In this document: in pieces, positions 6,066-56,717 of the stretch | Layout of the letters: each line of letters begins with the position of its first letter | Numbering within the stretch: position 1 is the first letter of the stretch | Source: Lytechinus pictus | Taxonomy: Eukaryota | Direction of reading: 5' to 3' | DNA: 64,000 bases | NCBI RefSeq assembly: GCF_037042905.1 | Contig: NC_087254.1 | Coordinates: 32,612,001 to 32,676,000 of the forward strand | Notes under the pieces: generated by a model | Seen by the model: only the letters and a program-made list of their open reading frames with translations | Databases searched by the model: none | Told to the model about the DNA's origin: nothing | Position numbers and translations under genes: made by a program

Positions 6066-6942
6066 AAAATATTACATGAGAATTGTCGTTTTACAAGAAT
6101 TTATTTCAATACGTTCCGCTTTTCCGTTCGTTTCGGACATGTTGAGTCCATAGGCATCCAGTCAGAAAAAAAGAGGGAAAGCGGTGAAATTTACTACAGT
6201 TCTGGCATGCACAATAATACCTTACACAAGTAAACTAAAATAAAAGTTCATACGCATTACTGAGAACTCACAGTACTCGCCTCTCTAAAGTGGCAATACT
6301 ACTTTCAAAATTTATATTTTGAGGTGCTGCTGGGTTTGTGCTCCTCCTGATCATGTGCACTTATACGTTAGTAGTTATTTGTTTGGAAAACCCTACACAC
6401 ACCAATAAATCAGTCCTCTCTCTGCTCCTACTAGTAGGAGATAGTCACAAAGAGTGGATGAAAGCTCGTATTATTAAAGTTGGTGGAAGCTTAAACATTA
6501 TTTTATGTTATTCACTTATTTTGGGGCTATTCTTGTTGAAACTATATTTTCGCGTGCTGAATCTCTTTAGGAGGATTCAAGAACAGAGAAAACGTATTAT
6601 CAGGGCCATTTATGACTGAGAACAACCAAGAAGTCTTTGTCGAAGACTCCTTTATACAGACATCAGAGGTACACGTATATAATTATATAAGATACAATTA
6701 AAAACCGAGGTGCTATACAAAATTTAGACCTCTGAACACAACCCCTATAAATAACCTTTATATTTACAATGTTGATACGCCTGACCATGCTGACTGTCGG
6801 GGCCTATACATGGAATAATGCGCAATTGTCGTAATAATGATTGCGGCGGTAACAAACAATACCGTAGGCCTATAATCGTGCACTAATGATGATTTTCACG
6901 TATAACCTTTGGTATTTTATTTTAACCCAAATCAGTCGCAAG

Positions 6943-9317: not shown

Positions 9318-9946
9318 CGTCACGGATTGGAAGAGCTACCGAATTAGAGCACGTCGATCCAAAGATAAACCGAGTAGGAGGCCCTCTAAGACGTTACAAC
9401 CACCCGTGATAGATCGCGATATAGCTATTGGCGATCAGCAACAAGTGATTCATGTCACCACTTGCCATGCTTGCGAAACGTAGCACGTTTTCGGCCTTCG
9501 CTGCTATTTGATAGTATTGTGAAATATTTAACACTGGGAGATAGATTAAACATGATCGAAGCTTCACCTGTACTGGCCGCACAGAAATGTTGTTAGCGCT
9601 AACAATGCGCTAACAGAGACCCTGTTACGACCGGTAATGTGGCAGCGATGCCTAATTTTTAAAAATGCATTAACTTACACATTGAAATCAATGTTTAGAC
9701 TTGAAAATCCGGAAGATGTGACTGGGCTTACTGCTAACGCTCTGTTACTTAGGCTAACGATGTTTCTTTGCGGCCGGCACTAGTCAATTGCTATAGTGAT
9801 TGCATGGCTATTAATTTGCTATCGGCATTTGCTATCCATACTTAACATGATATCATTTATGCAATAAACAAATAAAGTAAACAAATATTGTTTTCTAAAC
9901 ACTTTTAGTCACAGGGATGTAATTGGATCCAGATCGAATGTGCATG

Positions 9947-10160
9947 GTTCTTCTTCTTCTTCTTCTCGGGTCACTGCACAAGACCTGCCCAGTGGAGGGT
10001 ACAAGATCTGGCTTTGGGGTTAAAGGACTCCAGATCTTCGGCATGGCAAGGCTCTGGTAGGAGGGGGCAGACCAGAAGGTGTTGCATATCGTCTGATCCT
10101 CCCCACACTCGCAAGCATGTGAATGGTTACCAGACACACTCTGGTTGGTTTAAATCTGAA
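9947..10160 (-). mobile_element. 3' end of an RTE-like LINE with (AGA)n tail
   Basis: The minus strand encodes CECGEDQT...HLLVCP (C-terminal Cys/His motif, frameshifted) followed by an AAGAAGAAG tail. Confidence 0.55.
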
Positions 10161-11009
10161 TTCTAAGTCTTGTCAAAATATTGATATTTTGATAAAATAG
10201 ATAAAATATACACACTTGGAAGAAAATGGCAATTCTGTCCTCTTCAAATGCAACACTAAGAGCCCCTTTTGTGATACAACTGTGCACCCTAATACACTTT
10301 TTTGCACTTTAATGGAGAAGTTTGCTACATTTTTCAAATTTTCCGACGCATAGTTGATTTCCTCTTTAGGGAACGTGCATATTTGCACCTTTTGGACGCT
10401 AAATTATTAAGCACCCTATAAAGACTTGAGTTAAAATTTGCATCTTTATATAGGGTGCATTTCTGGGAGCAAAAAAAAAAGGAACAAAAGGTGCGTCCTT
10501 TGTAGGGTGCAAGATTTCACTGCCATAGTTTAATTCAGGGTTCAAAGTCTATTTTATTTTCTTACTGTGTAATACTCGGCGATCGTATTAAATTTTGAGT
10601 GACAATAATGCACTAATAATAGGCTCCACATTTGCTTTTAATGTGTGAATGGCAACACATGTATAAATCAGATGATGTTTGAAGGTTTGTATGGTGTTAT
10701 GAATCGCATAAATGGTTTACGGTACACCATGTATAAAGTCCTGGAAGGACTTAGATAAGAAAAGTGAATAGAAATGGAGGTGAAATGGAAAGTTGAGAAA
10801 GTGGAGGTTGGGAAGTAGAGTATTCTTTTCAAAATGAGTGCATTCATATAAGACTCTAAACAAGAAGGAGAAAAAGCTGAGTAGTTGGCAGAATGAGCAG
10901 ATAAGAGAAGGCTGGCTTGAGTCGGCGAATAGAAAATATAAATGGATATCATATAAGTAAAGATTTCTTTTTTTTACATCAATACATTATAATAGATGCA
11001 TAGTAATGG

Positions 11010-11680
11010 TCGAATTATTCTAGACAACCCTTGTGCGTGGCGTTTGTAGATTTCGCACAAGCTTTTGACAGTATAGAATTTCAGGGAGAAATAACAGCTT
11101 TACAGGTACAAGGTGTGCACCACAATTACATCAAACTCATCCAGGAAATGTATAGCCAAGTAACCATTCACCTGCACAAAGACAGTGAACTTCCCCATCA
11201 ACAGAGAGGAGTGCAGCAGGGAGATACCATTTCAGCCGAACTGATCGACACTGCACTGAAAGAAAGAAATCGTAAACTAGACTTGGAAAGTACTGGGCTA
11301 AACATTGAAGGTGAGGGTCACCGATGATAACACTCTAATCACTGAAGGTGGTCACAAGCTATATGCTCAACGATCTGAAAGTAACAAAGTAGGCCTGAAA
11401 ATCAATACGAAAAAGTAATGTTTAACAAATTTGCCACGGAGAAAAGGGTAATATTGGATAATTATGAAATCGAGACAGTAGATCACTATATCTACCTTGG
11501 GCAACACATCAGAATAGATCATAGACAACTGGAATAAGTTAAAAAGAAGACAATAGCTAGATGGAATGCTTTTTAGAATTTCAATGATATAATGAAGAGC
11601 AACATGCCGATTTGCCTTAAAAGAAAAGTCTTTAACCAATGTATTATAACGACAATGACTAAAAATACCTGAAACCAAAC
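11010..11680 (+). mobile_element. Degenerate RTE-clade reverse transcriptase fragment
   Basis: LCVAFVDFAQAFDS and RGVQQGDTIS RT motifs, then GLKIN..K and YIYLGQ, with stops and frameshifts. Confidence 0.8.
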
Positions 11681-12439
11681 CGATGTAATAAAAAAAAATT
11701 CACAATGATAAAACCGTATTCTCAATCGCTAAATTGACTTATGCAAGTATAAATCTTGCTCTATCATAAAAGGTGGTGAAATAAGTACAGATGATTTTAA
11801 TGAACTATTAGTGAAATGAGTGCAAAGTAGAACGATGAGCAAAAGATTTGAAATGAGCAAATGAGTGGAGCGGTGACCAATAAAGTATTAAAAAACAACG
11901 ATACTATTGATATAATAATTTGCATCACTGGGTATTTCGCTTGCTTTGTTGCCTCGAATGTATTTATCCAAAATATTTTCAATTCACTCAATGTAATAAG
12001 TAAGTATAAAAGTTCAGTCATATTTGACCGACTCCTATTGTCCTCGTAAAAAAGTGATAATAATTACGAACAGATTCGTAAAGTGACTTGACTAAATCTC
12101 TGATGAATAGGCCTATTTACCTATCATAAAGCAGAGCTATGGGGACAAAAGGTTATCAGGGTATATGCACCTTTGTAAGGTGGAGGGAAATTTTAAAATG
12201 AGAGAGGAAGAAAAAAAGAAAGCCCCCCTCCCTCAATTCCACCATAGAGCTATTATGATTCCACGATCAACCAAAGGGGCGTCATAAAACAAATGTAATT
12301 GGCGCAATTGGGAAACGGGGTGCAGGGATGCTCAAGAACTCTGTCAAGATTTTTCTGTAGGCTTTAAGCAGCAACCACTGGGAATGAGGTTGGTATGCTA
12401 TGATTTTTTTTTAAGATTGGGAAAATGAGGAAGCTACTC

Positions 12440-12530
12440 GACCAACCCACAGCTGCTAAACTTACTCATGCTGGCTTTTGCATCTTGATTACTGCAATTC
12501 TGCTCTTTCTGGTATTCCACTCTCACATTT
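12440..12530 (+). mobile_element. Short L2/CR1 ORF2 C-terminal fragment
   Basis: Reads AAKLTHA...LDYCNSALSGIP, the conserved (SR)LDYCNS motif. Confidence 0.5.
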
Positions 12531-13716
12531 ACGCCCACCAGTGATGGTATATATACGACGGAAAATAAAAAGAAATCTAATCTGAAATCTTACCTAATAT
12601 GTAATCCTGATTTATGTTTTTTATGGGGGCATATGTGTACACAGCGAAAACGATTGCAATAAAATTTGACCTATATTATTCCTGATAGTCAAATTCACAC
12701 AAGTCTTACCAAAATGATTAGATTTTCAGGTCAGATCATTGGAAATGACCAGAATTCTGATTAAATTTTATTCATAGTAAACTTCTGCTAATTTATTGTC
12801 AATTCTTTATGAATAAATCACTTTTAAGCCGATTACCTACCCCTTCAATCAGCGGCGTAATCAGCCCATGCACCCCTTCCCCCCCCCCCCCAAAAAAAAA
12901 GGGGGGGCTACAACATGGTATACGTAGGAAAATTTCGTCGAGCTTTTTTTGGAGGGCAGGGCACCTAAGCCCCCATGTGTACGCCATTGCCTGCAATTCG
13001 ACCATATTAGTATAGCCGAATCCATAATCATACGCGGTGGTGAATCTAGACTTCACATAAATAGACCCTCCAAAGTCATTAACACCAAGAATATGTAACT
13101 ATTTTTTTCATGCTTGAGGCCACCATAGACATCAAGTAACACATGCACTAATGATGACTGAGTCCTGTGTTCATAAATCATGATAATTTTTTTTTCAATT
13201 ATGTATTAAACAATTCCAATGTATCATACTTGTATTTGGAGGCGAAGTGTTTATATATGAAAATGTATTTATGCCTATATGTTTCATGTTGTGTAATAAT
13301 ATATTACTTTGTATCATGATATTGAACGCAGTAGTAAATTAAATAAAAACAAACTAGGATATTCACATGGGTCGAGGGTGGCAAATTCAGGTCAGTGGTT
13401 TGTTAATAAAATTGATTGATTCGGAACTTTAACCTCGTATATAGAGGACCAGATGAATAAACTAAATCCAGACAGCGAAAAAAAAAAACTCCATGAATAT
13501 TAAACACTTTGTTTGCAGGGAGTGTCATATAATATTGACGTCAAACAATTAAGCTTAACTCTTGTGTAATCACCAAGTCGACACCAGGACCCTGTTTCAC
13601 GGTACCTGTTGATGGGAATTTACAAGCTGCTGTTATAAGCTACCGAAATAATGCCTTTTGAATAAAGTATCAAGAACGTTTTGTGAAACCGGACACGGGC
13701 ATATATAACACATCAT

Positions 13717-20577: not shown

Positions 20578-23500
20578 ATGGCGTCTAGATATGGTGTTAT
20601 GTTCCTGCTCGCTTTCTTGCTTGGAGTATCTTTCAACTCTGTAGAGGGTCGACCAATCTTTCCCAATATAAAGACAGTGACTAATCTCAACATTGACAAT
20701 TATGTCGGAAGGTGGTACGAGGTAATTATTATCATTCACCTCACAAACTATTTGATACAACTTATCTATCGATTTACTAATAAACTTTGCATAAATTATA
20801 GATTTAAAAGTTACAACAAAGTGATGGAGGTCTATCAGAAGATAGGCTATACAATTTGCAAAAAAATTGACGATAGTGAAGGATGCACTGTCAATATTTT
20901 ATACAAATCATTGTATATGAAATATATATTTGAGGTTTTACATGTAAGATTGTTGAGTTATAGAAATAGTTGTCAAGAACAAGTCATGAAAAAACAGGTG
21001 AAAAGTATTTTTTAAAGGACAATGAGATGGCATAATTTAGAAGGAGAAACGGAACAAAATGGATGGGGAAAAGGACATATTCGGAAAAGAAAAGGCATAA
21101 AAAGAAATGCTCTACAAATATCACTATCCTCAAGAATATGGTATAGCGGCTTATACGTTTTGCGGAAACCCCTTAAAAATCAAATTTCAGTTAGCACCCA
21201 TACATAAACCAGGCAAGGAAAGCACTATCAGTGAACAATTTAAAATAAAATCTAATTTATTTAATAAGCATATCAAGAGTTCTCACATAGCAATGTATAA
21301 TAATGTCGTTGAATAGCTTTTACGATCAAATTTTTTTTTTTTTAATATCATAATTATGTAGATGTACTCTGACCTTGTAGTGAAGGCCACATTTGAAAGG
21401 AATTCATATTGCACAACAGCCACATGTAAGTATAAAAATATAATGGTTTAAATCATACTCGCAAATGGCAAGGTAAACCTATACTTTTTCTCAAAATTTT
21501 TAAGTTCCCCTATTGAGCCAACCACCACACAACATACGACGCTCAATATCAAAAGATTTCGTTACTTTTGCATGCTTCTGTTTTATGTTTTTTTTAAATA
21601 ATTTTCTTGTAGCTTTCGGCCATCTAACGAAATTTTGCCTTTCGGTCACAACTTCTTTCTTGAATGTTATAGGCCTATATGCATAAATATTTATTTCACA
21701 TTTATCAAACAGTCAATGTCTAAACGAACCCCTCACTAATATAGTTCCATCCTTTCTGCAGTCTGTCTGTCTATGTTATGTGTCTGGCAAAAGGAAGAAA
21801 ACTATTGAAACGATCCTATATTTTTCATTTATTCTGATTTTATGTTCCGCGTACAAAGAATCTTGCTATATATATGATTGCTTAAAAATCAATCACTGTC
21901 TTGACAATAGTATTCCCCCATCATTCATCGCTCACGGTGATGCAATTCGTGTGTTCGTTGATCACTTTAGCCCCAAGAGTCATAACGCTTTGTGAATGAA
22001 TTTTAGTACGCTTGAAATACATTGCCGCCCCCCCCCCATTTGTGGTTTGGATATTTTTTTTTCAATTACGTGAATGACCACGTAAGCTTCATTTGTTAAA
22101 CCACAAATGAACTTGATTTATTTCCGCATATAAGATGGAGGTCATTCTATTGGTTTCTTTACATATTATGTTTGGACATTTTGAGTTAGTTCAAATCTAC
22201 CAAAGACATGATAACATAAATACCAGTTACGTAATGAGTCCCGCCCCCCCCCCTAAAAAAAAAAAACAAGGGGCGCAACATGGCATGTGAGGTAAAATCT
22301 AAATGTATGATATTTGTTATAATATTTCATTTCCATTTTTTTTTATGAAGATGGGAAAATTAACGATACTGCTGTGACAGTTTTCAATTCTGGTCGCCTT
22401 GGTTCTCCAACTGGCCAGCCATCTGAGATACGTGGCATGGCATATGTTGCTGACGCAGCTGAACCCGGTCAACTCAAGTTGAAGTTCCCTAATATACCTC
22501 TTGGAGATTGTAAGTTGGTATATATGCCTAACTTCAAGGTTATAGTATATTGCTTATTCATAAGGCCTAAGTTTCATTTAAAAAATCATATCATATGATT
22601 TGTTACATCATTACAAATGTAATTGAAAAAGGAAACTACAGACTTCGGGGGCAAGTGCCCCCTTCCAATCGGTAATTGAAGGGAAAAGAAAGTGGTAAAG
22701 GAGGAGAAAGGGATAAATAGAAAGAAACCTACTAGGAAGGGGGAATTATATTTTATGCAAACGCGCGTGTACATAGAAATTCGATGACAGGACGTAAAAT
22801 TGTTTTGTTAAAAAATGAAACTTGTCAATGATAGTAGTAGTAGACTAGTAGCAGTANNNNNNNNNNNNNNNNNNNNNNNNNNNNNNNNNNNNNNNNNNNN
22901 NNNNNNNNNNNNNNNNNNNNNNNNNNNNNNNNNNNNNNNNNNNNNNNNNNNNNNNNNNNNNNNNNNNNNNNNNNNNNNNNNNNNNNNNNNNNNNNNNNNN
23001 NNNNNNNNNNNNNNNNNNNNNNNNNNNNNNNNNNNAGTAATATTAGTAATAGTAGTAGTAGTAGTNNNNNNNNNNNNNNNNNNNNNNNNNNNNNNNNNNN
23101 NNNNNNNNNNNNNNNNNNNNNNNNNNNNNNNNNNNNNNNNNNNNNNNNNNNNNNNNNNNNNNNNNNNNNNNNNNNNNNNNNNNNNNNNNNNNNNNNNNNN
23201 NNNNNNNNNNNNNNNNNNNNNNNNNNNNNNNNNNNNNNNNNNNNNNNNNNNNNNNNNNNNNNNNNNNNNNNNNNNNNNNNNNNNNCCTTTATGATCGCAT
23301 TGTGTTTATAGACAGTTGGAGACGGTGGTTTCCTAGGCAACAGCCTACATATTTGTCTTATTTCCCTATAATCCTGAATTCCTCCGATCTCTTTTCAGAT
23401 TGGGTAATCGCACTGGGCCCAGTGGAGGACAACAAATACCAGTACGCGGTGGTGACCGAGCCTTTGATGCTACAGTTATTCATTCTCGCCCGAGACCCTG

Positions 23501-41019: not shown

Positions 41020-44000
41020 GTAAGATAAAAAGGAGAAGTGCGATTAAGGAGATTTATAATAAAAATGAGGAAACGGTGCGAGATTGCAAAGGTATTATAA
41101 AAATCATTCGGGAGTTTTATAAAAATTTATATGCATGTAAAAATCTTGAAACTAATGATGATATTGAAAACATGTTTTTTAGTGATTTACCCAAATTGAG
41201 TAAAGAAAATAGAGAGTTTTGTGAATATCCGATAACACATGAAGAATGTTTTCAGGCTTTAAAGGAAATGAAATGGAATAAATCGCCTGGCAATGATGGT
41301 TTTACCGCAGAGTTTTACTTTAAATTTTGGCCACTTTTAGGGAAAATCATAGTTGAAGCTTTCAATGAGAGTTTTGAAGTTAAAATGTTGTCAAATTCGC
41401 AGAGACAGGGGGTAATTACTCTAATTGAAAAAGAAGGCAAAAATCCTTTGCACATGAAAAACTATAGGCCGATAACTCTTTTGAATGTAGATTATAAAAT
41501 TTTGTCAAAAGTGTTAGCGACAAGGGTGAAAGAGGTCTTGGGAGATATTATTCATTGTGATCAAGTGGGTTATGTCAAAGATCGTAATATTGGGGAAGCA
41601 GTTCGGTTAATTGATGATCTGTTTTTTCAGTCTTTGTATCAACCCTTAGGTTTTTTAATTGCAGTGGATTTTGAAAAGGCATTCGATTGTATCTCTCATA
41701 AATTTTTATTCAAAACTTTAGAACATTTCGGGTTTGGGAAAAATCTGTGTTCTTGGGTCAAAACTCTTTATTATAATGTTAGTAGTTGTGTGTTGAACGG
41801 GGGGCACTCTACGGGATATTTTGAAGTTAATAGAGGAGTAAGGCAGGGGGATCCACTCTCTCCATATTTATTTATCATAGCGATTGAATTATTAGCTCAT
41901 TATATTAGGAGAGATGTTAATATTAAAGGGATAGGATTTGGGAAACGGGAAATAAAACAAGTTCTGTATGCAAACGACATTACATTGTTTTTAAAAGATA
42001 TGAACTCGATCCATAGAGTAAAGAAAATATTCTCAGATTTTGAAAATTTAAGTGGATTGAAGATTAATATGGATAAAACAAACTTTTTATGGTTGGGAGA
42101 AGAAAGAGATAGACCTGGTTTACCACTTCTTGGACATTGGTTACAACATATTAAAATATTAGGGGTATGTTTCGCACGGGATTGTAAAGTCAAAGATGAC
42201 TTGAACTATAAAGAAATCTTGAGTAAAATTAAAAGACTTATTGGTTGGTGGAAGCAGAGAGATCTTACGATGTATGGTAAAATAAAACTTTTGAAAATGT
42301 ATGCATTTTCAAAATTAAATTATGTTTCTTCCCTGATGACAGTCCCAAAAGACGTTTTTAAGGAAATAAAAAGAATTTCTTTTAACTTTATTTGGGGAGG
42401 AAGAGATAGAATAAAACGCAAGGTTCTATATCAAGACTATTCTGTTGGAGGACTGAGAGCTCCAAATTTTGAGGTCTTTGTTAAGACCCAACGAATAATG
42501 TGGATTAAACGTTTGCTGGATGGAGGGAAAAGTTCGGGTTGGAAAGCAACCTTCGAATATTTTTTTAGCTCTTTAGGTGGTCGAATCATATTTCTGTGTG
42601 ATTATGATACGAGTAGAATGAATTTAAAAGGTATACCATTATTTTACATAGATATGCTTAAGGCATGGCACGAATTGGATAAGTGTAGACATTTTGGAGG
42701 GAAAAGTAATCCCATTATTTTTTATAACAAGCGTCTATGCCTTAATAATAAGACCTTTTTTTATATTGAATTATTTCAGAAAGGTATAGTTAAGGTCTCG
42801 GATATAATAGTTGGAGGTAAATTAAGACCAGTTTCATACTGGTATAATCTGAAAACTTGCTCAAAATTCAAAAGATATTTTCAGTAATAACAGAAGAGTG
42901 GATACAAAATGATTTTATGGAAATGGATACAGACAACTTTGAAATTCAATTGATGATATGTGGGCATGTTCAGAAACTATGTGATATAAAATCTAGACGA
43001 ATATATGACCACTTCATTGAAAATTTTCAAATTGATTATGTATTTCATGTTACAGATGGGCAATCCGAATATGATTTGGGAATGGGAGAACTGAAAGAAG
43101 TATTTTTGAGACTGAAATGTGCAATGCTATGCAATAAACACAGAGAATTTCAATACAAACAATTACAAGGGGCTGTGTACACAAAAAGGGAACTTTTTAA
43201 ATTCGGTTTTGAGACAGATAATTTATGTTCCTTTTGTAAAAAAGAAGTTGAGTCTTACCAACATTTATTTTTTTATTGTCCTGAAGTTAAGCGATTATGG
43301 GAAGAGATGAGTAAAATATTTCAACTGAATGAACTTGGCAGTGACGTTTGGAAAACAATTTTCATGGGGATATCTGGAAATACTACAAGAGTAGCTTTAA
43401 TAAACTGTATTATATTCTTAATTAAGTATATCATTTTTAGTTCAAGAAAACAGGGAATATTGCCAACCGTACAGAAAGTGACACATTTGGTTGAAGAGTA
43501 TAGAGATACGGAATATCAAATAGCGTTTAAAAAGGGGAAGCTGGGGGTGCACTTAAGGAAATGGGAACAAATCAATGCATACCTTTCTTAATACTATGGA
43601 TGTATTGGTTGCTTCATTTTGTTTCTGTTTTGTTTATTTGTTCAAATACAGATAATTGTACCAGAGCAGGATGCATTGTGTGTGGGTGTACGTGTGTAGA
43701 TGGATGTGTGAGTTTTGTGACGGGGAAGAGGGGGGGGGGGGGGAGCTGTGAGTAGTGGTGGTTTGAAGTGAGCTTGTGTGAGTGTCTGGGGAGAGAGATG
43801 AGGGGGGAGGGGGTATGGGGGTAAGGTGAGTGTGTAGGGACGTTTTAGGATAACCTTCCTCTAATTAACCTTTAAAATAATATTTTATCCTTTTTTTTTT
43901 ATTTTTCGTACAATTAATATGTGCAAAAGAGATTATTTCTATTCTATTCAGGGAAAAAGTCATTTTTTACAAAGTACGTTTTTTTTTTTTTGTCGATTGA

Positions 44001-44256: not shown

Positions 44257-45909
44257 ATTGATTGATTGATTTTATTTGGCAAGTCACCATAACATATATA
44301 CAGTAGCATTACAACAACAGGCTTGCACAGGATGACCCACGAAAGCTCGAAAGCTTATTTCCAGTGGGGTCCTCGACATACAGAATTAAGATAATAAAGT
44401 GGTAAATTATACTATTTACATATTAAAAAAATGAAGAAAAAAAAATCAGAATTTACTATTACCAATAAATAAGATATATAGATAATATATACAAGAAAAT
44501 AAAGAAAAAGAAGAAAAGAAGGAGAAGAAGGAGGATGAATAGAAAAAGAAAGGGAGGAGGAGGAGAAGGAGACGGAAGAAAAGGATGAGGAAGACAAGGA
44601 GAAGAACAACAGCAAAAACGGCGACAACAATAACAACACGAAGAGGAGAATAGAAGATAAAAGAAATAGAAAGAATACAAGAAAGGACATATCGAAGCTT
44701 CAATCAAACTATGTAAAATAAATAATAATACCTGGTAGAGAAGAGAAAAGAACGTGGTCAGTGTTCAGGCTAAATCAACCGTATAACATATCATTTGCAT
44801 CTTCTCTTTGACTCTCAAGTGAAAGATATTCTTTCAATTTCCTCTTAAAATGCAAAAAGTTTCCTATTTCCTTTATATCATTGGGAAGGGAATTCCAATG
44901 TTTGATAGCATTGTAATAAAAGGAGTTACCAATACTACCTACCCTTTCTGGTAAGCAAAAGTTGAAATGGCTGTTTCTTGTATTATAGTTATGTAATTCG
45001 GTAACTAGATTAAAGTTTGATCCAATGTAATGATTCGATCTATTGTGATAGATTTTATGCACGTGGTGCAAAATAAGCTGTTTTGAACTTTTGTTGACTT
45101 CAAGAAAACCTGCTCCAGAGAGTTCGGTGTAGCCAACATGGGTTCTGGGACCAGAACAGTTAATGAATCTAACTATTTTATTCTGTTTAATTTTCAACTT
45201 CTTTTTATCGAGTTCGCTTATGCCACTAAACCAAGCAATGTTAGCATAGTCAAATAAACTCCGAATAAGAGCAAAACAGAGAATACGCCTTGCTTTTTGA
45301 TCCATACAAATTTGATACCTGTACAGAAATTTCAAACGGGCATTCGCCTTTTTCACAATTGAATACTAAAGATGAAAATGAAAGGGAGCTAGTCAACTTA
45401 ATGCCTAAATACTTTACAGATTCTTTCCTCTGAATTATCTTATTATTGTATGATACTTCAAATTCAAATGAAGTTTTATAATTACTTTTAGAACAAAACA
45501 GAATGCTCTCGGTTTTGCCTAAGTGTAACGATAATCTATTATCAGTCATCCAATCGACACAACAGCTGTTCGCTAAGTTTTTCCTCAACAAATTTTGGGT
45601 TGGAATTTGAACAAAGTAGTACGCTATCATCTGCATACAATAATAATTTACAGTCAGCTTTTATACAAATAGACATGTCATTGATATAAGTTGAAAATAG
45701 AATTGGGCCTAAAATACTTCCCTGTGGAACTCCACACGTTATAGGCATAATTTTGGAACGAATATCGCGAATAGCCACTACTTGATGTCGATTCGACAAG
45801 TAGGATTTGAACCATGGTACAGTAGCCTGGTTAAAACCCATTATTTGTATTTTTTTTTCAATAAGATGCCATGATTAACTGTATCAAATGCTTTTTGAAG
45901 ATCTAGGAG
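44257..45909 (-). mobile_element. L2/CR1-group LINE, 3' part (RT remnant, pyrimidine-rich 3' UTR, (AATC)n tail)
   Basis: DLQKAFDTV, GVPQGSILGPILF, LLYADD, KYLG, FDYA and WNSLP motifs across frameshifted ORFs 45542-45841, 45250-45636 and 44775-45356. The tail is AATAAAATCAATCAATCAATC. Confidence 0.88.
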
Positions 45910-46056
45910 AGTAGTTATGGGAGAGACCTCATACCTAATTGACCTTTGACCTTTGACCGCATGACCTTTGACCCCAACTTCCGGTCACTGTTGACCCCGT
46001 GACCCCACCTTCCGGTCAATCATGACCTTTGACCTTTGGGTACGCGGTAAACAGGA

Positions 46057-46300
46057 AATTGGATAATGGAGCGCGGGAAGCGATTTTAATTGGATAATGG
46101 AGCGCGGGACGCGATTTTAATTGGATAATGGAGCGCGGGACGCGATTTTAATTGGATAATGAAGCGCGGGGACGCCATCTTAATTGGATAATGAAGCGCG
46201 GGACGCGATTTTAATTGGATAATGACTCCGCGTGGGGACGCGATTTTAATTGGATAATGACTCCGCGTGGGGACGCCATCTTAATTGGATATGAGTCCAC
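46057..46300. repeat. Subterminal ~31-34-bp tandem repeat (about 8 units), mirrored at 50222-50456
   Basis: Unit ATTGGATAATG(G/A)AGCGCGGGACGCGATTTTA and variants. Confidence 0.9.
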
Positions 46301-46365
46301 GTAGGGACTCGATCTACAGGAAATTTAATTAACCTCCGCGTGGGGTGATCTCCCGCGCCCTCGCC

Positions 46366-46371
46366 TATAAA
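46366..46371 (+). promoter_or_regulatory. Candidate inward-facing TATA box of the element (mirror at 50142-50147 on -)
   Basis: CCTATAAA downstream of a GC-rich tract and of repeats each containing ATTGG (inverted CCAAT). Confidence 0.4.
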
Positions 46372-47057
46372 TGATGGGAGTAAACCGAGAACATGAACTT
46401 GGGATATCCTATTCAAGGTGAAAGCCGGCTCTCTCTGTCTCTTATTACAACAATTATTGGTAATCCAACATGTGATTATAATCCTGATAACAGTGGCATC
46501 TCAAACTCTACTCATTCCAGACTTTCCCCCATCAAAACTCTCTGACTTTTCCATACTGTTTTGTACATACCTCCATACTTTTCATTTTAACTCACATGAC
46601 CTGCACGGCTCTCTGACCCGCAAAAGTATACTATATTGAAACCCGTAGACGACTCCTTTCAATCAACTTCATTCATCCGCAGTACAGATGGTGATAACAT
46701 GAAACACTATACAGTCAAGGATGATTCTTTATTATTACTATCATTTATTCTATTCCATTTCAATGTAGATAGGTTCAATTAGTGTATAAACAGCAGATTT
46801 TGATACAAAGGTAAAAATAATGTAAGATATGTTCTCAAATTACGTTGTCACAACAAAATAATTAACTGTTCATTGTTAATATTAAAGTGAAGTTCTCGTT
46901 TTTTTTCTTTTCCTTCGCTTAACTTATTGGATTGTAACACATGTCTATGGATGGCATTCAGAAAATATGAACACAATGAAGTTCAAACTGTCATTTATGC
47001 CCGCATTTATGTTGACGGCGTTTTCTTGGATTATTCGACAAGCTGATGTTTGTGCCT

Positions 47058-47708
47058 TTAGTTGTAGGTTCCATCTTCACCCTCCGTTTCTTCTCCACCA
47101 TCATCATTATCGTCATCGTCACCTTGATACTGGAATAAACCATCGAATTGTGAACCATGCCTGGCTAACACTCTCTGTACGGCTTTCCGGAATTCCATGC
47201 CATTCTCTAATCTTTCCGTGAGATCGGACACGATTTCATGATTGATGTCAGCGTCTTCGAGGTACACGTTCTGCTGCAAGAACTGAGAGTACAGATCGAA
47301 AAAGATGCGTTTGACTGCCCACATTAGTTTCACGTGAGCCTTTGCTTTAGCGTCTTCTTCTTCCATTCCTTCTGAGATGTATTTCTGATATTTTTCGTCT
47401 CTCAAGTCCTTGGTGGCCGTCATGGCTTGCTCTAACCATCCTCGATAAGCGAGGTTGTCTTCAGTTTCTTCCATGTTTGCTGTCATTGACGATTCGTGTC
47501 CATCGCTTTCTGATACGCTCGTTTCGGAATCACCGTTGGATTCTTCAACTCTTTGCATTTGAGAGGATGGGTCGGATTCTTCATCTTCACTCGTTTCTTC
47601 TCCAGTATCATGCTCAATTTGTTCATGCCTCTGCATGTTATATTTCCTACTAAAAGTTTTATCGCATCGTGAACAAGCGTGACGGTTGGACATATCCAAT
47701 ATATTCAT
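47058..47708 (-). CDS. C2H2 zinc-finger + acidic + helical-domain protein, left copy (216 aa from first ATG)
   Basis: Intact intronless ORF with N-terminal C-x2-C-x12-H-x4-H (CSRCDKTFSRKYNMQRHEQIEH), an E/S/D-rich linker, a helical region and an acidic tail. Translation is identical to the right copy. Confidence 0.75.
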   Translation of the reverse strand: MNILDMSNRHACSRCDKTFSRKYNMQRHEQIEHDTGEETSEDEESDPSSQMQRVEESNGDSETSVSESDGHESSMTANMEETEDNLAYRGWLEQAMTATKDLRDEKYQKYISEGMEEEDAKAKAHVKLMWAVKRIFFDLYSQFLQQNVYLEDADINHEIVSDLTERLENGMEFRKAVQRVLARHGSQFDGLFQYQGDDDDNDDGGEETEGEDGTYN

Positions 47709-47800
47709 GCTGACTCGATGATTATTTGTTGGGAAATGAAGAAAATTAACGTTCAAACTTGTAATTATACGTAATCATGAAACGCGCGCGAAGGTACTTT

Positions 47801-48215
47801 GATTCTTACGGATTTTTACGCATTCTTACGGATTCTTACTCATTCTTACGGATTCTTACGGATGTTTACTCATTCTTACTCATTCTTACTCATTCTTACG
47901 GATTTTTTACGGATTCTTACGGATGTTTACGGATTCTTACGCATTCTTACGAATTCTTACTCATTCTTACGGATTCTTACGGATGTTTACTCATTCTTAC
48001 TCATTCTTACTCATTCTTACGGATTCTTACTCATTCTTACTCATTCTTACTCATTCTTACTCATTCTTACGGATTCTTACTCATTCTTACGGATTCTTAC
48101 TCATTCTTACGGATTCTTACTCATTCTTACGGATTCTTACGGATTTTTTACGGATTCTTACGGATGTTTACGGATTCTTACGGATTCTTACGGATGTTTA
48201 CGGATCCTTACGGAT
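47801..48215. repeat. 10-bp tandem array (TTACGGATTC / TTACTCATTC / TTACGGATGT), left
   Basis: About 41 units with 10-bp period. Confidence 0.95.
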
Positions 48216-48290
48216 CCACGTTGGAATGACCCATGCATGGGTCATTCTAGCGTGGATGAACATATTTTCCTTGAGATTATAGGAAAGCAT
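48214..48290. other. Central spacer: 44-bp loopless palindrome plus a short second hairpin
   Basis: ATCCACGTTGGAATGACCCATG|CATGGGTCATTCTAGCGTGGAT (48214-48257; 20/22 pairs, both mismatches G-T). TTTCCT-9 nt-AGGAAA at 48266-48286. Confidence 0.85.
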
Positions 48291-48296
48291 TGATTA

Positions 48297-48711
48297 ATCC
48301 GTAAACATCCGTAAGAATCCGTAAGAATCCGTAAACATCCGTAAGAATCCGTAAACATCCGTAAACATCCGTAAGAATCCGTAAACATCCGTAAGAATCC
48401 GTAAAAAATCCGTAAGAATCCGTAAGAATGAGTAAGAATCCGTAAGAATGAGTAAGAATCCGTAAGAATGAGTAAGAATCCGTAAGAATGAGTAAGAATG
48501 AGTAAGAATGAGTAAACATCCGTAAGAATCCGTAAGAATGAGTAAGAATTCGTAAGAATGCGTAAGAATCCGTAAACATCCGTAAGAATCCGTAAAAAAT
48601 CCGTAAGAATGAGTAAGAATGAGTAAGAATGAGTAAGAATGAGTAAACATCCGTAAGAATCCGTAAGAATGAGTAAGAATCCGTAAGAATGCGTAAAAAT
48701 CCGTAAGAATC
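48297..48711. repeat. 10-bp tandem array, right (inverted copy)
   Basis: GAATCCGTAA / GAATGAGTAA / ACATCCGTAA units. Unit order differs internally from the left array. Confidence 0.95.
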
Positions 48712-48803
48712 AAAGTACCTTCGCGCGCGTTTCATGATTACGTATAATTACAAGTTTGAACGTTAATTTTCTTCATTTCCCAACAAATAATCATCGAGTC
48801 AGC

Positions 48804-49454
48804 ATGAATATATTGGATATGTCCAACCGTCACGCTTGTTCACGATGCGATAAAACTTTTAGTAGGAAATATAACATGCAGAGGCATGAACAAATTGAGC
48901 ATGATACTGGAGAAGAAACGAGTGAAGATGAAGAATCCGACCCATCCTCTCAAATGCAAAGAGTTGAAGAATCCAACGGTGATTCCGAAACGAGCGTATC
49001 AGAAAGCGATGGACACGAATCGTCAATGACAGCAAACATGGAAGAAACTGAAGACAACCTCGCTTATCGAGGATGGTTAGAGCAAGCCATGACGGCCACC
49101 AAGGACTTGAGAGACGAAAAATATCAGAAATACATCTCAGAAGGAATGGAAGAAGAAGACGCTAAAGCAAAGGCTCACGTGAAACTAATGTGGGCAGTCA
49201 AACGCATCTTTTTCGATCTGTACTCTCAGTTCTTGCAGCAGAACGTGTACCTCGAAGACGCTGACATCAATCATGAAATCGTGTCCGATCTCACGGAAAG
49301 ATTAGAGAATGGCATGGAATTCCGGAAAGCCGTACAGAGAGTGTTAGCCAGGCATGGTTCACAATTCGATGGTTTATTCCAGTATCAAGGTGACGATGAC
49401 GATAATGATGATGGTGGAGAAGAAACGGAGGGTGAAGATGGAACCTACAACTAA
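48804..49454 (+). CDS. C2H2 zinc-finger + acidic + helical-domain protein, right copy (216 aa from first ATG)
   Basis: Same translation as the left copy. TATA-like GTATAAT at ~48742 and AATAAA signals at ~49764-49785. Confidence 0.75.
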   Translation: MNILDMSNRHACSRCDKTFSRKYNMQRHEQIEHDTGEETSEDEESDPSSQMQRVEESNGDSETSVSESDGHESSMTANMEETEDNLAYRGWLEQAMTATKDLRDEKYQKYISEGMEEEDAKAKAHVKLMWAVKRIFFDLYSQFLQQNVYLEDADINHEIVSDLTERLENGMEFRKAVQRVLARHGSQFDGLFQYQGDDDDNDDGGEETEGEDGTYN

Positions 49455-50610
49455 AGGCACAAACATCAGCTTGTCGAATAATCCAAGAAAACGCCGTCAA
49501 CATAAATGCGGGCATAAATGACAGTTTGAACTTCATTGTGTTCATATTTTCTGAATGCCATCCATAGACATGTGTTACAATCCAATAAGTTAAGCGAAGG
49601 AAAAGAAAAAAAAACGAGAACTTCACTTTAATATTAACAATGAACAGTTAATTATTTTGTTGTGACAACGTAATTTGAGAACATATCTTACATTATTTTT
49701 ACCTTTGTATCAAAATCTGCTGTTTATACACTAATTGAACCTATCTACATTGAAATGGAATAGAATAAATGATAGTAATAATAAAGAATCATCCTTGACT
49801 GTATAGTGTTTCATGTTATCACCATCTGTACTGCGGATGAATGAAGTTGATTGAAAGGAGTCGTCTACGGGTTTCAATATAGTATACTTTTGCGGGTCAG
49901 AGAGCCGTGCAGGTCATGTGAGTTAAAATGAAAAGTATGGAGGTATGTACAAAACAGTATGGAAAAGTCAGAGAGTTTTGATGGGGGAAAGTCTGGAATG
50001 AGTAGAGTTTGAGATGCCACTGTTATCAGGATTATAATCACATGTTGGATTACCAATAATTGTTGTAATAAGAGACAGAGAGAGCCGGCTTTCACCTTGA
50101 ATAGGATATCCCAAGTTCATGTTCTCGGTTTACTCCCATCATTTATAGGCGAGGGCGCGGGAGATCACCCCACGCGGAGGTTAATTAAATTTCCTGTAGA
50201 TCGAGTCCCTACGTGGACTCATATCCAATTAAGATGGCGTCCCCACGCGGAGTCATTATCCAATTAAAATCGCGTCCCCACGCGGAGTCATTATCCAATT
50301 AAAATCGCGTCCCGCGCTTCATTATCCAATTAAGATGGCGTCCCCGCGCTTCATTATCCAATTAAAATCGCGTCCCGCGCTCCATTATCCAATTAAAATC
50401 GCGTCCCGCGCTCCATTATCCAATTAAAATCGCTTCCCGCGCTCCATTATCCAATTTCCTGTTTACCGCGTACCCAAAGGTCAAAGGTCATGATTGACCG
50501 GAAGGTGGGGTCACGGGGTCAACAGTGACCGGAAGTTGGGGTCAAAGGTCATGCGGTCAAAGGTCAAAGGTCAAAGGTCAATTAGGTATGAGGTCTCTCC
50601 CATAACTACT

Positions 50611-50867
50611 TAGGAGTATCATCCCAACGAATTGTCCCTTAAAAATATTAGTTCTCAGATAATTAGTCAAGTGAATAAGGCATGTCTTAGTCGAATAGTC
50701 ATGTCGAAAACCAGACTGATATTCGTAAATCATTTCATTTTCTTTAAAATATTTTTCGATATGAACACATACCGCCTTTTCTAGAATTTTGGATACTATG
50801 CTTAAAACACTGATAGGTCTATAATTTTCAACAGCAGTTTTATCTTTCTTCTTATATGAATAGGAGT
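50611..50867 (-). mobile_element. L2/CR1-group LINE, 5' continuation of the RT remnant split by the Polinton-like element
   Basis: Minus strand TPIH..KDKTAVENYRPISVLS...YQSGFR..STKTCL...GMILL joins DLQKAFD across the TSD. Confidence 0.85.
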
Positions 50868-54411: not shown

Positions 54412-56717
54412 TCAGTCTGAGTATTCTGTCGCTTTTGATCGCGACTTGATCCTAACCACCCATAACGACAGAACCCATACGATGGCGACATTCCCGACAA
54501 GCACGGCGAGAAAAACACCAAAGGTTGACATGAATGTAGGCATGCCGTGCTGCTCAATGAAATCTGGGCGCTCCTCCAACTCCGCAAGAAAGGCGAGGTA
54601 ATGGCAGTAGCTGGCGAGACTACTCCCGATGTGGAAGAACTGATGACTGTGGCCAATGAAGTCGAACTTCCCAGGCGCTATGACCTCTGGGAATCTCGTG
54701 GAATAGAGTAATGAGATCCCGAATATGAAATAAAATTGCCACATTTGGAAGTAAAGAGCATCGCTGTCGCACCCCGTTGACTCGCAATAGATGAGGCGAT
54801 AGACTAAAGGAATTCTGAAGAAAAAAAAAGCATTTTAAAAATGATATTTTTTACAAATCAATCTAATAATCTCACCGCGCCAAGTTTGTAAGGGAAGAAA
54901 TTGCTTCAAAGTTGCGAGCGACCGAAGCGAGTAAGCACAAATTTTAAAATCCGACACAATTAAAATCGAATTTGGGATAAATATTGACCTAATATCCAAA
55001 GAAATTAAGATAGCATATTTCACCCTTTTCTTTCCTTTTCTTTTTCTTTTTTTTTCATCGGGAAACTTTTTTGGGGGAGGGGCATGGCTCCCAAGCGCCC
55101 CCCATCTGTACCCTAGTGGTTCGCCAATGATATCCTCGTGAATATTTCTTACTTGCACCAGATGTAAGGTATAGCAAACGCTGGCAGACGACCGCCATCT
55201 CGGAGGGGAGCCCAGGTGGAAAACCGGCTACAACATGCCAAGTAAGTACTTCCGAAGGCCGTTACCATAGCAACAGGGATGTATACATGGTAAAGAGGCG
55301 TGTCTATTAACTCCGGTGGAAATGAGTAGGTATAGCAAGCTGTGAACAGAAATAGAATGAAAATATTATGTCAGGGCTAAATATGAAGATATATGCCTAC
55401 TTTCATGAACTTATCACCTGCTTATTAAAAAAGAATTGGGAACCCCATATGAATTTACAAAATATTCGTAAAACTGCATGCATTCTTCTCATGTGCAACG
55501 GCTAATTTTCCACTTTGGTCTAAACATTTTGTTCCGTTTACACGCCAATTCAATAAAAAAATACTTGTATTCACTTGCAACGCATTCTCATTATAAACAC
55601 ATGATAACAAGTAAATCGTATTTATTGAGATATATGACAACAATGAAGGAGACATAAATCCCGAAAATCAAAGAAATTGTGATAGATACGATTGATCATA
55701 ATTTATAAAAATGATCATAGAAAAGTGAGCCTAATATCTTTTAATCGTTGAAATTCATCGGATGTTGTATGGTAGGCCAAATCATTGACCCTATCATTGA
55801 CTGTTTACCGAGGGTATAAGAATTAATTTCTTACCTAGACAAGTACCAAAACTGTACATACTAATCCCAAAATAGTCTATGAAGAAAAATGTGTATCTAG
55901 CACACTGGGACATGCTATTGAACATATGGGCAACGGAGCTGGCCATCGTGTAACAAAAGGTACCGAATAGGAAAACTATAACAGGCCACATTAAGGGATC
56001 GTGGGCAACACCGTGATCGTTGACGGCGACCATCCATGTAAGGCGAAGGAAGATGATGGCGGGGATGAAGTGAGTCCAGAAGTTGATTGTTTCGTTGGTG
56101 CGTTGGAGCGCACTAGCCAGGCAGGATGATGCGCTACTTTGACAGGACCGGTATCCCGAGATGATGAACGGCTCCCGAAAATCAGATGGAACCTGATGAA
56201 GAAGGGATATACAAAAGAGAAAAGGGTGAGGGAAGGAATGGCCATGAAGACACAGAAAGAGAGAGAGAGAGAGAGAGTATGAAGGGGGAGGGGCGAGAGG
56301 GGAATACAAATTTTTTCCACTTTGCGCAAATGTTGTGACACTCTATACAAACATTATCAATGCTCACTCAGGCATGAACAAGTATTGTCGTTTTGTATCT
56401 GATACATCTCATCTCATCTTGTCGATAGAAGTGATATTACAGTATCTGTCAACACTCACAGATCTGTCACATTTTGAAGTATCATTTAAATACATACATG
56501 TATATGTAACTTTTCTTTTGACTGTTTGATACGAACTGTTTACTCTTTAATTCATCACGAATTAATAGTTGTTGCTGGTATTAATTATTACTTCACTGAT
56601 ATCATTTACAATTTTATCTTATATGAATATTTTCATGAAAAAAAGACTTTATCTATACATTAAGTTGTTCCAGATTAAGCTTACCTGATCAAAACGAAGA
56701 AGTTTAAGCGTCCACAT
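54412..56717 (-). CDS. PAQR-family 7-TM protein, membrane progestin receptor-like (~326 aa, 4 coding exons)
   Basis: Minus-strand exons 56717-56685, 56192-55835, 55339-55153 and 54814-54412 (981 nt, GT-AG). Motifs QVP..FREPFIISGYR, NETINFWTH, SSVAHMF, DYFGI and PE...PGKFDFIGHSHQFFH. Confidence 0.9.

What the first reader, a model, noticed from the sequence alone, without database searches (positions are those of the whole stretch)
45910..50610. Whole-element palindrome with Polinton ends: candidate integrated snap-back/satellite genome of a Polinton (polintovirus)
Seen: a 4701-bp insert with AGTAGT...ACTACT termini and a perfect 6-bp TSD (TAGGAG). About 98% of it is two inverted ~2.3-kb arms, each running terminus, DR1-like repeats, ~31-bp repeats, one intact zinc-finger gene pointing outward, then a 10-bp array. 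No pPolB, integrase, ATPase, protease or capsid gene is present. Known: Polintons/Mavericks have AG(T)-repeat termini, 6-bp TSDs, protein-primed replication and TIRs usually of a few hundred bp to ~1 kb. Non-autonomous derivatives are normally thought of as internal deletions. Inference: this is one end of a Polinton copied back on itself, like snap-back defective genomes or self-complementary AAV. That gives a molecule with two functional origins/integration ends, mobilised in trans by a helper. The clean TSD shows the ends were integrated as one unit. A displaced single strand would fold into a full-length duplex with a ready origin and need no second-strand synthesis, which could make it an efficient parasite of the Polinton.
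Basis: partly seen in the sequence, partly recalled or inferred. Interest (0 to 1): 0.93.

Follow-up and report, generated by a model that had tools for sequence, protein, structure and literature searches.

The report
Palindromic mini-Maverick carrying zinc-finger genes
A 4.7-kb mobile element in a sea-urchin-like genome has the end signature of Maverick/Polinton virus-like transposons but none of their enzymes; it is almost a perfect mirror image of itself and belongs to a widespread family of small elements that all carry one conserved zinc-finger gene.

Summary
Window 45910-50610 is a 4701-bp insertion with AGTAGT…ACTACT ends and a perfect TAGGAG duplication, sitting inside a LINE reverse-transcriptase ORF. 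It has two inverted arms (2306 and 2315 bp) around an 80-bp spacer. The arms show no substitutions. They differ only in copy number of tandem units.

Each arm holds an intact 216-aa gene (one C2H2 finger, an acidic linker, and a helical domain with no known relative) pointing outward.

The ends and the 6-bp duplication match the published Maverick/Polinton signature. Five complete relatives in other assemblies (Lytechinus pictus and unidentified ones) have Maverick-type ends, a different 6-bp duplication each, the same gene family and no polymerase or integrase. This is a mobile, non-autonomous, gene-bearing family.

The inner edge of the arms falls at different places relative to the gene in different relatives. 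That favours repeated copy-back of the gene-side end over a simple internal deletion.

Not shown: any autonomous Maverick sharing these ends, so "one end of a Polinton" and "parasite of a Polinton" remain inference. The mirror layout, including the central spacer, is shared with an L. pictus copy, so it is inherited and not made anew at this locus.

Verdict: real, and a new variant of a known kind.

The parts
45904..45909 (.). left copy of the 6-bp target-site duplication TAGGAG
45910..50610 (.). whole element, 4701 bp, (AGT)2 ... (ACT)2 ends
45910..45939 (+). left terminal unique 30 nt starting AGTAGT (putative origin and integrase end)
   Evidence: The first 12 nt and nt 15-20 are shared with the L. 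pictus copy L001.
45940..46039 (+). left subterminal TGACC/GGTCAAA-rich block (7-bp units; 'DR1-like' by resemblance only), including a 31-bp unit repeated 1.9 times
   Evidence: A similar GGTCAA block follows the AGTAGT end in L004.
46057..46291 (+). left 31-bp tandem array, about 7 units
47058..47708 (-). left zinc-finger gene (216 aa plus stop), intact, pointing to the left end
47801..48215 (+). left 10-bp array (about 41 units), ending 92 bp upstream of the left gene's ATG
48216..48295 (.). central asymmetric spacer: a ~40-bp near-palindrome plus ~42 bp unique. About 60 bp of it is shared with the centre of the L. pictus copy.
48296..48711 (+). right 10-bp array (about 41 units)
48804..49454 (+). 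right zinc-finger gene (216 aa plus stop), intact, pointing to the right end. It has a C2H2 finger at residues 10-33, a disordered acidic linker at 39-76 and a five-helix domain at 86-192.
50200..50456 (+). right 31-bp tandem array
50474..50580 (+). right subterminal GGTCAAA-rich block (one 7-bp unit more than on the left)
50581..50610 (+). right terminal unique 30 nt ending ACTACT
50611..50616 (.). right copy of the target-site duplication TAGGAG
44775..45909 (-). downstream part of the interrupted non-LTR retrotransposon (RT motifs; decayed, ORFs in several frames); the neighbour, not part of the element
50611..50850 (-). upstream part of the same interrupted RT ORF; the neighbour, not part of the element

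Best explanation
This is a young copy of a non-autonomous Maverick/Polinton-type element, a 'mini-Maverick' that carries only a zinc-finger gene.

Shown:
- It was integrated as one unit by an enzyme that makes 6-bp staggered cuts.
- It carries the (AGT)2//(ACT)2 end motif.
- It encodes no replication, integration or capsid protein.
- It belongs to a family present in several assemblies, each copy with its own 6-bp TSD.
- Its only gene is under purifying selection.

Inferred:
- It is replicated and integrated in trans by the protein-primed polymerase, terminal protein and integrase of an autonomous Maverick that recognises the same ends. The doubled terminal trinucleotide fits the slide-back or jump-back style of end regeneration known from protein-primed replicons.
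- The mirror layout arose when the gene-side end of a small ancestor (TIR, array, gene, TIR, as in L002a) was copied back across the gene and its upstream array. That replaced the other end.
- The layout is then kept uniform because a displaced single strand pairs with itself (a panhandle taken to the extreme of a hairpin), so each new copy starts with identical arms that diverge only after integration.
- The two outward genes are transcribed from the short region between array and ATG.
- The protein is most likely a DNA-binding adaptor or regulator that serves the element. This is the weakest step.
For: - Ends and TSD. They match the published Maverick criteria (PMC8097293; PMC10045372).
- Family: five further complete elements with the same gene family have AG-type ends and non-palindromic 6-bp TSDs.
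  - L001, AAAGCA
  - L002a, GTAGTA, with AGAG..CTCT ends
  - L003, CATGGT
  - L008, TCTGTA
  - L010, AGCATG
  - In addition, L004 has a left AGTAGT end only.
- No core genes in or beside any copy.
- Gene under selection: dN/dS is 0.15 against L002a at dS 0.86, and 0.3-0.4 against the L001 copies. The protein has 270 relatives at E<=1e-3 with the same finger, acidic linker and helical layout.
- Copy-back:
  - The arm edges form a graded series relative to the gene.
  - L001 has a mirrored junction without a TSD.
  - Arm identity falls with apparent age: 100% here, 97% in L008, 92-96% in L003, 77-87% in L010.
- The shared central spacer shows the layout is inherited.
- The panhandle model for protein-primed replicons and 'homology-restoring mechanisms' is described in PMC11886824.
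Against: - No autonomous Maverick with these ends or this gene was found. The genome itself could not be searched at the DNA level with these tools.
- Neither the gene nor two end patterns of 18-20 nt occur in the viral contig collection.
- PMC11886824 itself notes that direct evidence for panhandles is lacking.
- Identical arms could also result from very recent formation or from gene conversion between arms in the chromosome.
- The finger's presumed base-contacting residues look conserved across lineages (read by eye) while the tandem repeats next to the gene differ. That does not favour lineage-specific binding of those repeats.
- The fold search gives no functional clue for the helical domain.
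Confidence: 0.62

Rival explanations
1. It is a simple internal-deletion derivative. An autonomous Maverick in this genome already has ~2.3-kb TIRs that include the zinc-finger gene and array, and this element is what remains after the core was lost, with the 80-bp spacer as the remnant.
For: - Non-autonomous Polintons are catalogued (family name Polinton-1N1 cited in PMC9341505).
- The conserved asymmetric spacer could be a remnant of internal sequence.
- TIR length varies widely among Mavericks.
Against: - Relatives with the same gene have it outside the TIR (L002a, L010) or only partly inside (L003, L008). The gene is therefore not a fixed part of a TIR.
- All seven contexts examined at the DNA level lack core genes.
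- The longest TIR reported for vertebrate Mavericks is 1447 bp.
Confidence: 0.15
2. It is a foldback-type or cut-and-paste transposon of another superfamily (for example IS3EU/GingerRoot, which also make 6-bp TSDs, or an undescribed one). On this reading the likeness to Maverick ends is coincidental.
For: - Long arms built from tandem sub-repeats with a short centre are the foldback hallmark, and foldback elements are reported from sea urchin (PMC4079207).
- IS3EU/GingerRoot give 6-bp TSDs.
Against: - IS3EU/GingerRoot termini are TA..TA or TG..CA, not AG..CT.
- All six complete elements and the L004 left end carry one of the two canonical Maverick end motifs, (AGT)2 or (AG)n.
- Classical foldback elements are not gene-bearing in this way, and, from my own knowledge, they make longer TSDs.
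Confidence: 0.1
3. It is an assembly artefact: either a false palindrome from chimeric long reads, or a collapse that removed a >10-kb core between the arms.
For: - Palindromes and tandem arrays are hard to assemble.
- The arrays differ between arms by unit counts, which could be consensus error.
Against: - Both flanks continue one interrupted RT ORF with a perfect TSD. A false palindrome would not give this.
- Independent assemblies show the same layout (L001 with the same spacer, L008).
- There are no N runs nearby.
- Unique spacer sequence sits between the arrays rather than an array-to-array join.
Confidence: 0.03
4. The zinc-finger elements are not dependent on a Maverick. They move by host enzymes or by an unrecognised activity of their own 216-aa protein.
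For: - The gene is conserved down to ~25% identity and is always the only gene.
- The helical domain has no known relative.
- No helper was seen.
Against: - A single finger plus a ~110-aa helix bundle has no resemblance to any nuclease, recombinase or polymerase.
- The end motif and TSD are those of Mavericks.
Confidence: 0.05

Closest known systems
Maverick/Polinton elements and their non-autonomous derivatives (Repbase-type 'Polinton-…N' families)
   Same: (AGT)2//(ACT)2 or (AG)n//(CT)n end motifs, perfect 6-bp TSDs and terminal inverted repeats. Dependence on trans factors is inferred.
   Different: - No pPolB, integrase, ATPase, protease or capsid gene.
- 3.5-6 kb instead of about 13-25 kb; L002a is 8.7 kb including a ~5-kb nested LINE.
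- Arms of 2.3 kb covering 98% of the element, against a mean of 402 bp and a maximum of 1447 bp.
- Carries its own conserved gene, which was never seen here next to Maverick core genes.
Foldback transposons (Drosophila FB, Galileo, Tetris; sea-urchin TU elements)
   Same: Very long inverted arms with internal tandem sub-repeats and a short unique centre. Such elements are present in sea urchins.
   Different: A 6-bp TSD with AG..CT ends, and a protein-coding gene duplicated in the arms. Galileo is a P-superfamily element (abstract listed). The TU details come from memory only and were not checked.
Panhandle or snap-back intermediates and defective genomes of protein-primed replicons (adenovirus, PRD1), and self-complementary parvovirus genomes
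   Same: Works alike in the proposed model: inverted ends pair within one displaced strand, one end can serve as template for the other, and a molecule made of one end copied back keeps two functional ends (otherwise established knowledge).
   Different: Those are extrachromosomal viral molecules. This one is an integrated, heritable family with its own selected gene. No single-stranded or extrachromosomal form has been observed.
Satellite-like dependants of larger viruses or elements (virophages, transpovirons, polinton-like viruses)
   Same: Small linear-type elements with inverted ends that are presumed to use another element's machinery.
   Different: Those encode several proteins, and often capsid or helicase-polymerase genes (PMC5499653). 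This family encodes one small DNA-binding-type protein, and it was not found in viral contigs.

Membership tests
Maverick/Polinton | 6-bp target-site duplication | tested here: met
   TAGGAG in the window. AAAGCA, GTAGTA, CATGGT, TCTGTA and AGCATG in five relatives. Criterion from PMC8097293 and PMC10045372.
Maverick/Polinton | 5'-(AGT)2//(ACT)2-3' or (AG)n//(CT)n end motif | tested here: met
   AGTAGT/ACTACT in the window, L001, L003, L008, L010 and the left end of L004. AGAG/CTCT in L002a. Criterion.
Maverick/Polinton | terminal inverted repeats | tested here: met
   Present but extreme: 2306 and 2315 bp, against 46-1447 bp reported.
Maverick/Polinton | encodes protein-primed family B polymerase and retroviral-type integrase (the definition of autonomous members, PMC5499653) | tested here: not met
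   The only real ORFs are the two zinc-finger genes. It can therefore be filed only as a non-autonomous derivative or dependant, not as a Maverick proper.
Maverick/Polinton | capsid, ATPase and protease module | tested here: not met
   none in the relatives either
Non-autonomous derivative of a given Maverick family | terminal sequence shared with an autonomous element of the same genome | not testable with these tools
   The sea-urchin genome cannot be searched at the DNA level here. The viral contig collection has no match to the ends or the gene.
Foldback elements | long arms made largely of tandem sub-repeats with a short or absent middle | tested here: met
   Sub-repeats of 7, 31 and 10 bp occupy about 0.75 kb of each 2.3-kb arm; the centre is 80 bp.
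Foldback elements | TSD and termini of the mobilising superfamily (for example P-type for Galileo) | tested here: not met
   A 6-bp TSD with AG..CT ends points to Maverick-type integration. The comparison values for FB and TU come from memory only.
IS3EU/GingerRoot | 6-bp TSD with TA..TA (or TG..CA) termini | tested here: not met
   The TSD length fits but the termini are AG..CT.
C2H2 zinc-finger proteins | C-x2-C ... H-x3-H finger matching Pfam zf-C2H2 | tested here: inconclusive
   The window protein scores 22.9-23 bits, below the cut-off of 25.2. However, 33 of 44 family members match at E<=0.01, and the model shows a beta-hairpin plus helix at residues 10-33 with pLDDT about 91.

The most novel reading that the evidence does not exclude
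The zinc-finger mini-elements are an old, self-sustaining satellite lineage of Mavericks. On this reading they are a hyperparasite that keeps only the ends and one DNA-binding protein of its own. They repeatedly turn themselves into self-complementary (hairpin-capable) genomes by copying one end back, and they have switched between helpers that use (AGT)2 ends and helpers that use (AG)n ends.
Probability: 0.3. Interest if true: 0.8.

Novelty: new variant of a known kind. Interest (0 to 1): 0.62.

Why it matters
Mavericks/Polintons are seen as virus-like elements at the root of several eukaryotic DNA virus groups. Little is written about their dependants: one review passage mentions Tlr1 as sometimes viewed as non-autonomous polintons, a survey found none in a lizard genome, and a family name appears in passing.

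If the family is a gene-bearing dependant with Maverick ends that spans several animal assemblies, three things follow.
- These elements have satellites with their own selected function.
- TIR length in protein-primed replicons can grow by copy-back until the genome is a full palindrome.
- A perfectly identical-armed copy would mark very recent Maverick-type activity in a sea-urchin genome.

The chimeric L. pictus gene models that start with this gene's first residues also suggest that such copies drive transcription into neighbouring host genes.

Tried and rejected
- Search for an autonomous partner. The contexts of 12 protein look-ups and a Pfam scan of ORFs inside L002a, L004 and L008 showed only LINE or other retroelement genes and host genes.
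- Viral contig collection. No relative of the gene and no match to two end patterns of 18-20 nt.
- Metagenome scan. Only three short contigs.
- Exact look-up of the window protein. Not on record, so the source assembly and its other copies could not be reached.
- Function of the helical domain. Pfam, PDB fold search and viral fold search gave nothing beyond the finger.
- Cluster names for ten relatives. One generic name only.
- Kapitonov & Jurka 2006 could not be read. Its content is cited only through later papers.
- The first alignment (A1) was too diverse for the search for related loci.
- L002b, the second gene copy in L002. The inverted repeat around it has no AG-type ends, and the dN/dS values for it are meaningless because the copy is broken.
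- L009. No ends found.
- Rfam and tRNA scans. Nothing in the element.
- Rejected: the 'TSDs' found inside arms by my scan are palindromic hexamers that any inverted repeat produces. Only the outermost, non-palindromic ones count.
- The third large protein search was left unused because no query available to me would have found the helper.

Full report
**1. Observation**

- Window 45910-50610 is 4701 bp. It begins AGTAGT, ends ACTACT, and is bracketed by TAGGAG at 45904-45909 and 50611-50616.
- Aligned to its own reverse complement it gives 4610 matches and 22 mismatches. Every mismatch lies in the 10-bp arrays or the centre.
- The rest of the arms (about 1.9 kb each) has no substitution. It differs only by one 7-bp GGTCAAA unit and one base of a homopolymer.
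- Written as strings of unit variants, the two 10-bp arrays have the same order apart from three unit-level gains or losses. The arms therefore differ only in tandem-unit copy number.
- The arms are 45910-48215 and 48296-50610. The 80-bp spacer holds a ~40-bp near-palindrome plus ~42 unique bases.
- From the end inward, each arm holds: a 30-nt unique terminus; a TGACC/GGTCAAA-rich block; about seven 31-bp repeats; roughly 750 bp of non-coding sequence; a 216-aa ORF on the outward strand (47058-47708 minus, 48804-49454 plus); 92 bp; and about 41 units of a 10-bp repeat.
- No other ORF in the element is credible.
- The 26-nt terminus occurs nowhere else in the window, with 0 expected by chance. 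No arm sequence recurs in the window.
- The only N runs are at 22857-23285.

**2. It is an insertion, not a local duplication or an artefact**

- Read separately on the minus strand, the right flank is a non-LTR RT ORF ending ...GQFVGMILL and the left flank resumes LLDLQKAFDTVNHGILL. The repeated LL is the duplicated hexamer.
- A false palindrome or a collapsed assembly would not restore a single interrupted ORF with a clean 6-bp duplication.
- Independent assemblies show the same architecture (section 4).

**3. The gene**

- The 216-aa product has one C2H2 finger at residues 10-33. Its Pfam score is 23 bits, just under the cut-off, but 33 of 44 relatives match at E<=0.01.
- It then has a disordered acidic linker, a confidently predicted five-helix domain at residues 86-192 (pLDDT about 95-98) and an acidic tail.
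- The helical domain has no Pfam family and no structural relative in the PDB or among viral models at E<=1e-3.
- The family is large: 270 cluster representatives at E<=1e-3 and 69 at E<=1e-10. Most are about 150-250 aa with the same layout. Among the closest hits the only named organism is Lytechinus pictus; the rest are unnamed ENA, JGI or Logan contigs.
- The closest proteins are from L. pictus at 92% and 70% identity. The window therefore comes from that species or a close relative. The exact protein is not on record.
- The gene is under purifying selection. dN/dS is 0.15 against the L002a copy at dS 0.86, and 0.3-0.4 against the nearly identical L001 copies.

**4. Relatives**

Every relative for which DNA could be fetched and whose ends lie within the contig is a short element with Maverick-type ends and its own 6-bp duplication.

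| Locus | Source | Element | Length | Ends | TSD | Arms | Gene copies |
|---|---|---|---|---|---|---|---|
| L001 | L. pictus CM073244.1 | 6638-12779 | 6142 bp | same terminus as the window | AAAGCA | composite | one nearly full-length copy plus two partial |
| L002a | L. pictus CM073242.1 | 3884-12561 | 8678 bp | AGAG…CTCT | GTAGTA | ~0.68-kb TIRs of 54-bp repeats | one intact, near the right end and pointing to it, preceded by a TACGGAT-type array |
| L003 | ENA ERZ25073789 | 8634-12153 | 3520 bp | AGTAGT | CATGGT | 92-96% identical; inner edge in the gene's 3' end | one, 26% identical to the window's |
| L008 | GCA_949826985.1 | 7683-12576 | 4894 bp | AGTAGT | TCTGTA | 97% identical | two divergent: one full-length with one frame change, one cut at its 5' side by the arm edge |
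| L010 | ENA ERZ25073802 | 8060-11897 | 3838 bp | AGTAGT | AGCATG | ~0.9 kb, 77-87% identical | one, central |
| L004 | GCA_029980105.1 | 4620 to contig end | more than 3974 bp | AGTAGT (left end only) | not available | not available | one |

Further points:
- Most of the L002a interior is a nested LINE.
- In L004 the AGTAGT end is followed by GGTCAA repeats, and the contig stops before the other end.
- None of these loci, and none of the gene lists of four contigs without DNA, holds a polymerase B, rve integrase, packaging ATPase, protease or capsid gene.
- Each lineage for which this was examined (window, L002a, L003, L004) has a tandem array immediately upstream of the gene. The unit sequence differs: 10 bp here, 21 bp in L002a, CTGCTCATGA in L003 and 42 bp in L004.

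**5. What kind of element**

- Barreat & Katzourakis (PMC8097293) used 5'-(AGT)2//(ACT)2-3' or (AG)3//(CT)3 plus perfect 6-bp TSDs to recognise vertebrate Mavericks. They report TIRs of 46-1447 bp (mean 402) in elements of 12.7-24.6 kb.
- PMC10045372 gives 6 bp as the characteristic TSD of Polintons. It notes that the only other eukaryotic groups with 6-bp TSDs it lists, IS3EU and GingerRoot, end in TA..TA or TG..CA.
- All six complete elements meet both Maverick criteria. The family even uses both canonical end motifs.
- The elements fail the definition of an autonomous Polinton, which requires polymerase and integrase (PMC5499653).
- The correct filing is therefore a non-autonomous, Maverick-ended element. 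Such derivatives are catalogued: the family name Polinton-1N1 is cited in PMC9341505. I found no description of a gene-bearing, palindromic lineage.
- What I could not test is the key link, an autonomous Maverick with the same ends in the same genome.

**6. How the palindrome arose**

Three comparisons bear on this.
- First, the ~60-bp asymmetric core of the spacer is shared between the window and the centre of L001, which sits at another locus with another TSD. The mirror layout is therefore inherited and transposes as a unit. It was not generated at this site.
- Second, across the family the inner edge of the arms falls at different places relative to the gene. It is outside the gene in L002a and L010, inside the 3' end in L003, near the 5' end in L008, and beyond the gene and its upstream array in the window and L001. 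In every case the copied end is the one the gene points to. This graded series is what repeated, independent copy-back of one end would give. It is not what inheritance of a fixed long TIR from an autonomous parent would give.
- Third, L001 contains a junction that joins the middle of the gene to position 5 of a terminus. The junction is present on both sides as mirror images, not as a direct repeat. It was therefore formed once, at a short microhomology, and then mirrored. This is direct evidence that a mirroring process acts on these elements.

Arm identity falls from 100% here to 97%, 92-96% and 77-87% in copies that otherwise look older. That is as expected if arms are identical when a copy integrates. 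For protein-primed replicons the classical way to obtain this is pairing of the inverted ends within a displaced strand. This is the panhandle model, also invoked for 'homology-restoring' repair. PMC11886824 stresses that it lacks direct proof.

**7. Mechanism, with status**

Shown:
- integration as one unit with a 6-bp stagger
- Maverick end motifs
- absence of enzymes
- family mobility
- selection on the gene
- a mirrored junction
- inheritance of the layout

Inferred:
- trans-replication and integration by a helper Maverick
- hairpin or panhandle pairing as the source and keeper of arm identity
- outward transcription from the 92-bp region between array and ATG
- a DNA-binding adaptor or regulator role for the protein

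On the last point, I expected the finger to co-vary with the neighbouring repeats. By eye, its presumed contact positions look conserved across lineages. If it binds DNA specifically, the site is therefore more likely something the lineages share. This stays open.

**8. Rivals**

- Simple internal deletion of a long-TIR Maverick: 0.15.
- A foldback or other-superfamily element: 0.10.
- An unknown self-sufficient mechanism: 0.05.
- Assembly artefact: 0.03.

Reasons are given in the Rival explanations section.

**9. Novelty and score**

- Its reading is right about the kind of ends, the non-autonomy, the family test and the mirror-copy idea.
- It is unproven about a Polinton parent and a parasitic life style.
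- It is corrected on one point: the copy-back happened in the family's past, and probably on an already tiny zinc-finger element.
- I rate it a new variant of a known kind, with interest 0.62.

**10. Declaration of a slip**

One search printed tblastn segment bounds by reading frame for the right gene copy of L008. Those bounds bracket the place of its single frame change.

The consensus lines printed by the alignment tool were not used.

Noticed in passing
L001:6638-12779 (L. pictus CM073244.1): A composite relative. Each half contains a junction of mid-gene sequence to position 5 of a terminus, present as mirror images without a TSD. The right half also has a tandem duplication of a ~680-bp unit (gene part plus terminus), and the two halves carry different internal deletions.
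   Followed up: partly
proteins P0012, P0015, P0070 (L. pictus gene models): These models start with the first 43-92 residues of the zinc-finger protein. P0012 continues as a sialyltransferase-like protein and P0015 as a hydroxylysine-kinase-like protein; P0070 (642 aa) carries no name. They look like chimeric models, which suggests that copies of this element drive transcripts that splice into neighbouring host genes.
   Followed up: no
window 46366-46420 (and mirrored near 50100-50155): A TATAAA box downstream of the 31-bp array is followed by an ATG and a GT donor-like site on the inward strand. An inward transcript would be antisense to the near gene and sense to the far one, so it could fold into a long hairpin RNA.
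   Followed up: no
L002:3884-12561: A sister family has the same gene but different ends (AGAG…CTCT) and 54-bp TIR repeats. It carries a nested LINE of about 5 kb. A second, broken gene copy lies at about 17.5-19.1 kb in the same locus, without recognisable AG-type ends.
   Followed up: partly
window 41076-43591 (+): A second non-LTR retrotransposon: an RVT_1 ORF of 603 aa followed by a zf-RVT ORF. It coincides with a strong positive GC skew at 42-44 kb.
   Followed up: no
window 4336-4407 (-): A tRNA-Val (CAC) gene, found by both ARAGORN and Rfam.
   Followed up: no
window 8808-9317 (+) and 55794-56309 (-): Host-like coding pieces: a Rolling-stone (Rost) family match and a HlyIII/PAQR family match. 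They are probably exons of host genes.
   Followed up: no
window 22857-23035 and 23066-23285: Two N runs (179 and 220 bases). They were left as they are, and are far from the element.
   Followed up: no
L004:7940-8030: A stretch downstream of the zinc-finger gene looks tRNA-like on the reverse strand. It was not scanned.
   Followed up: no
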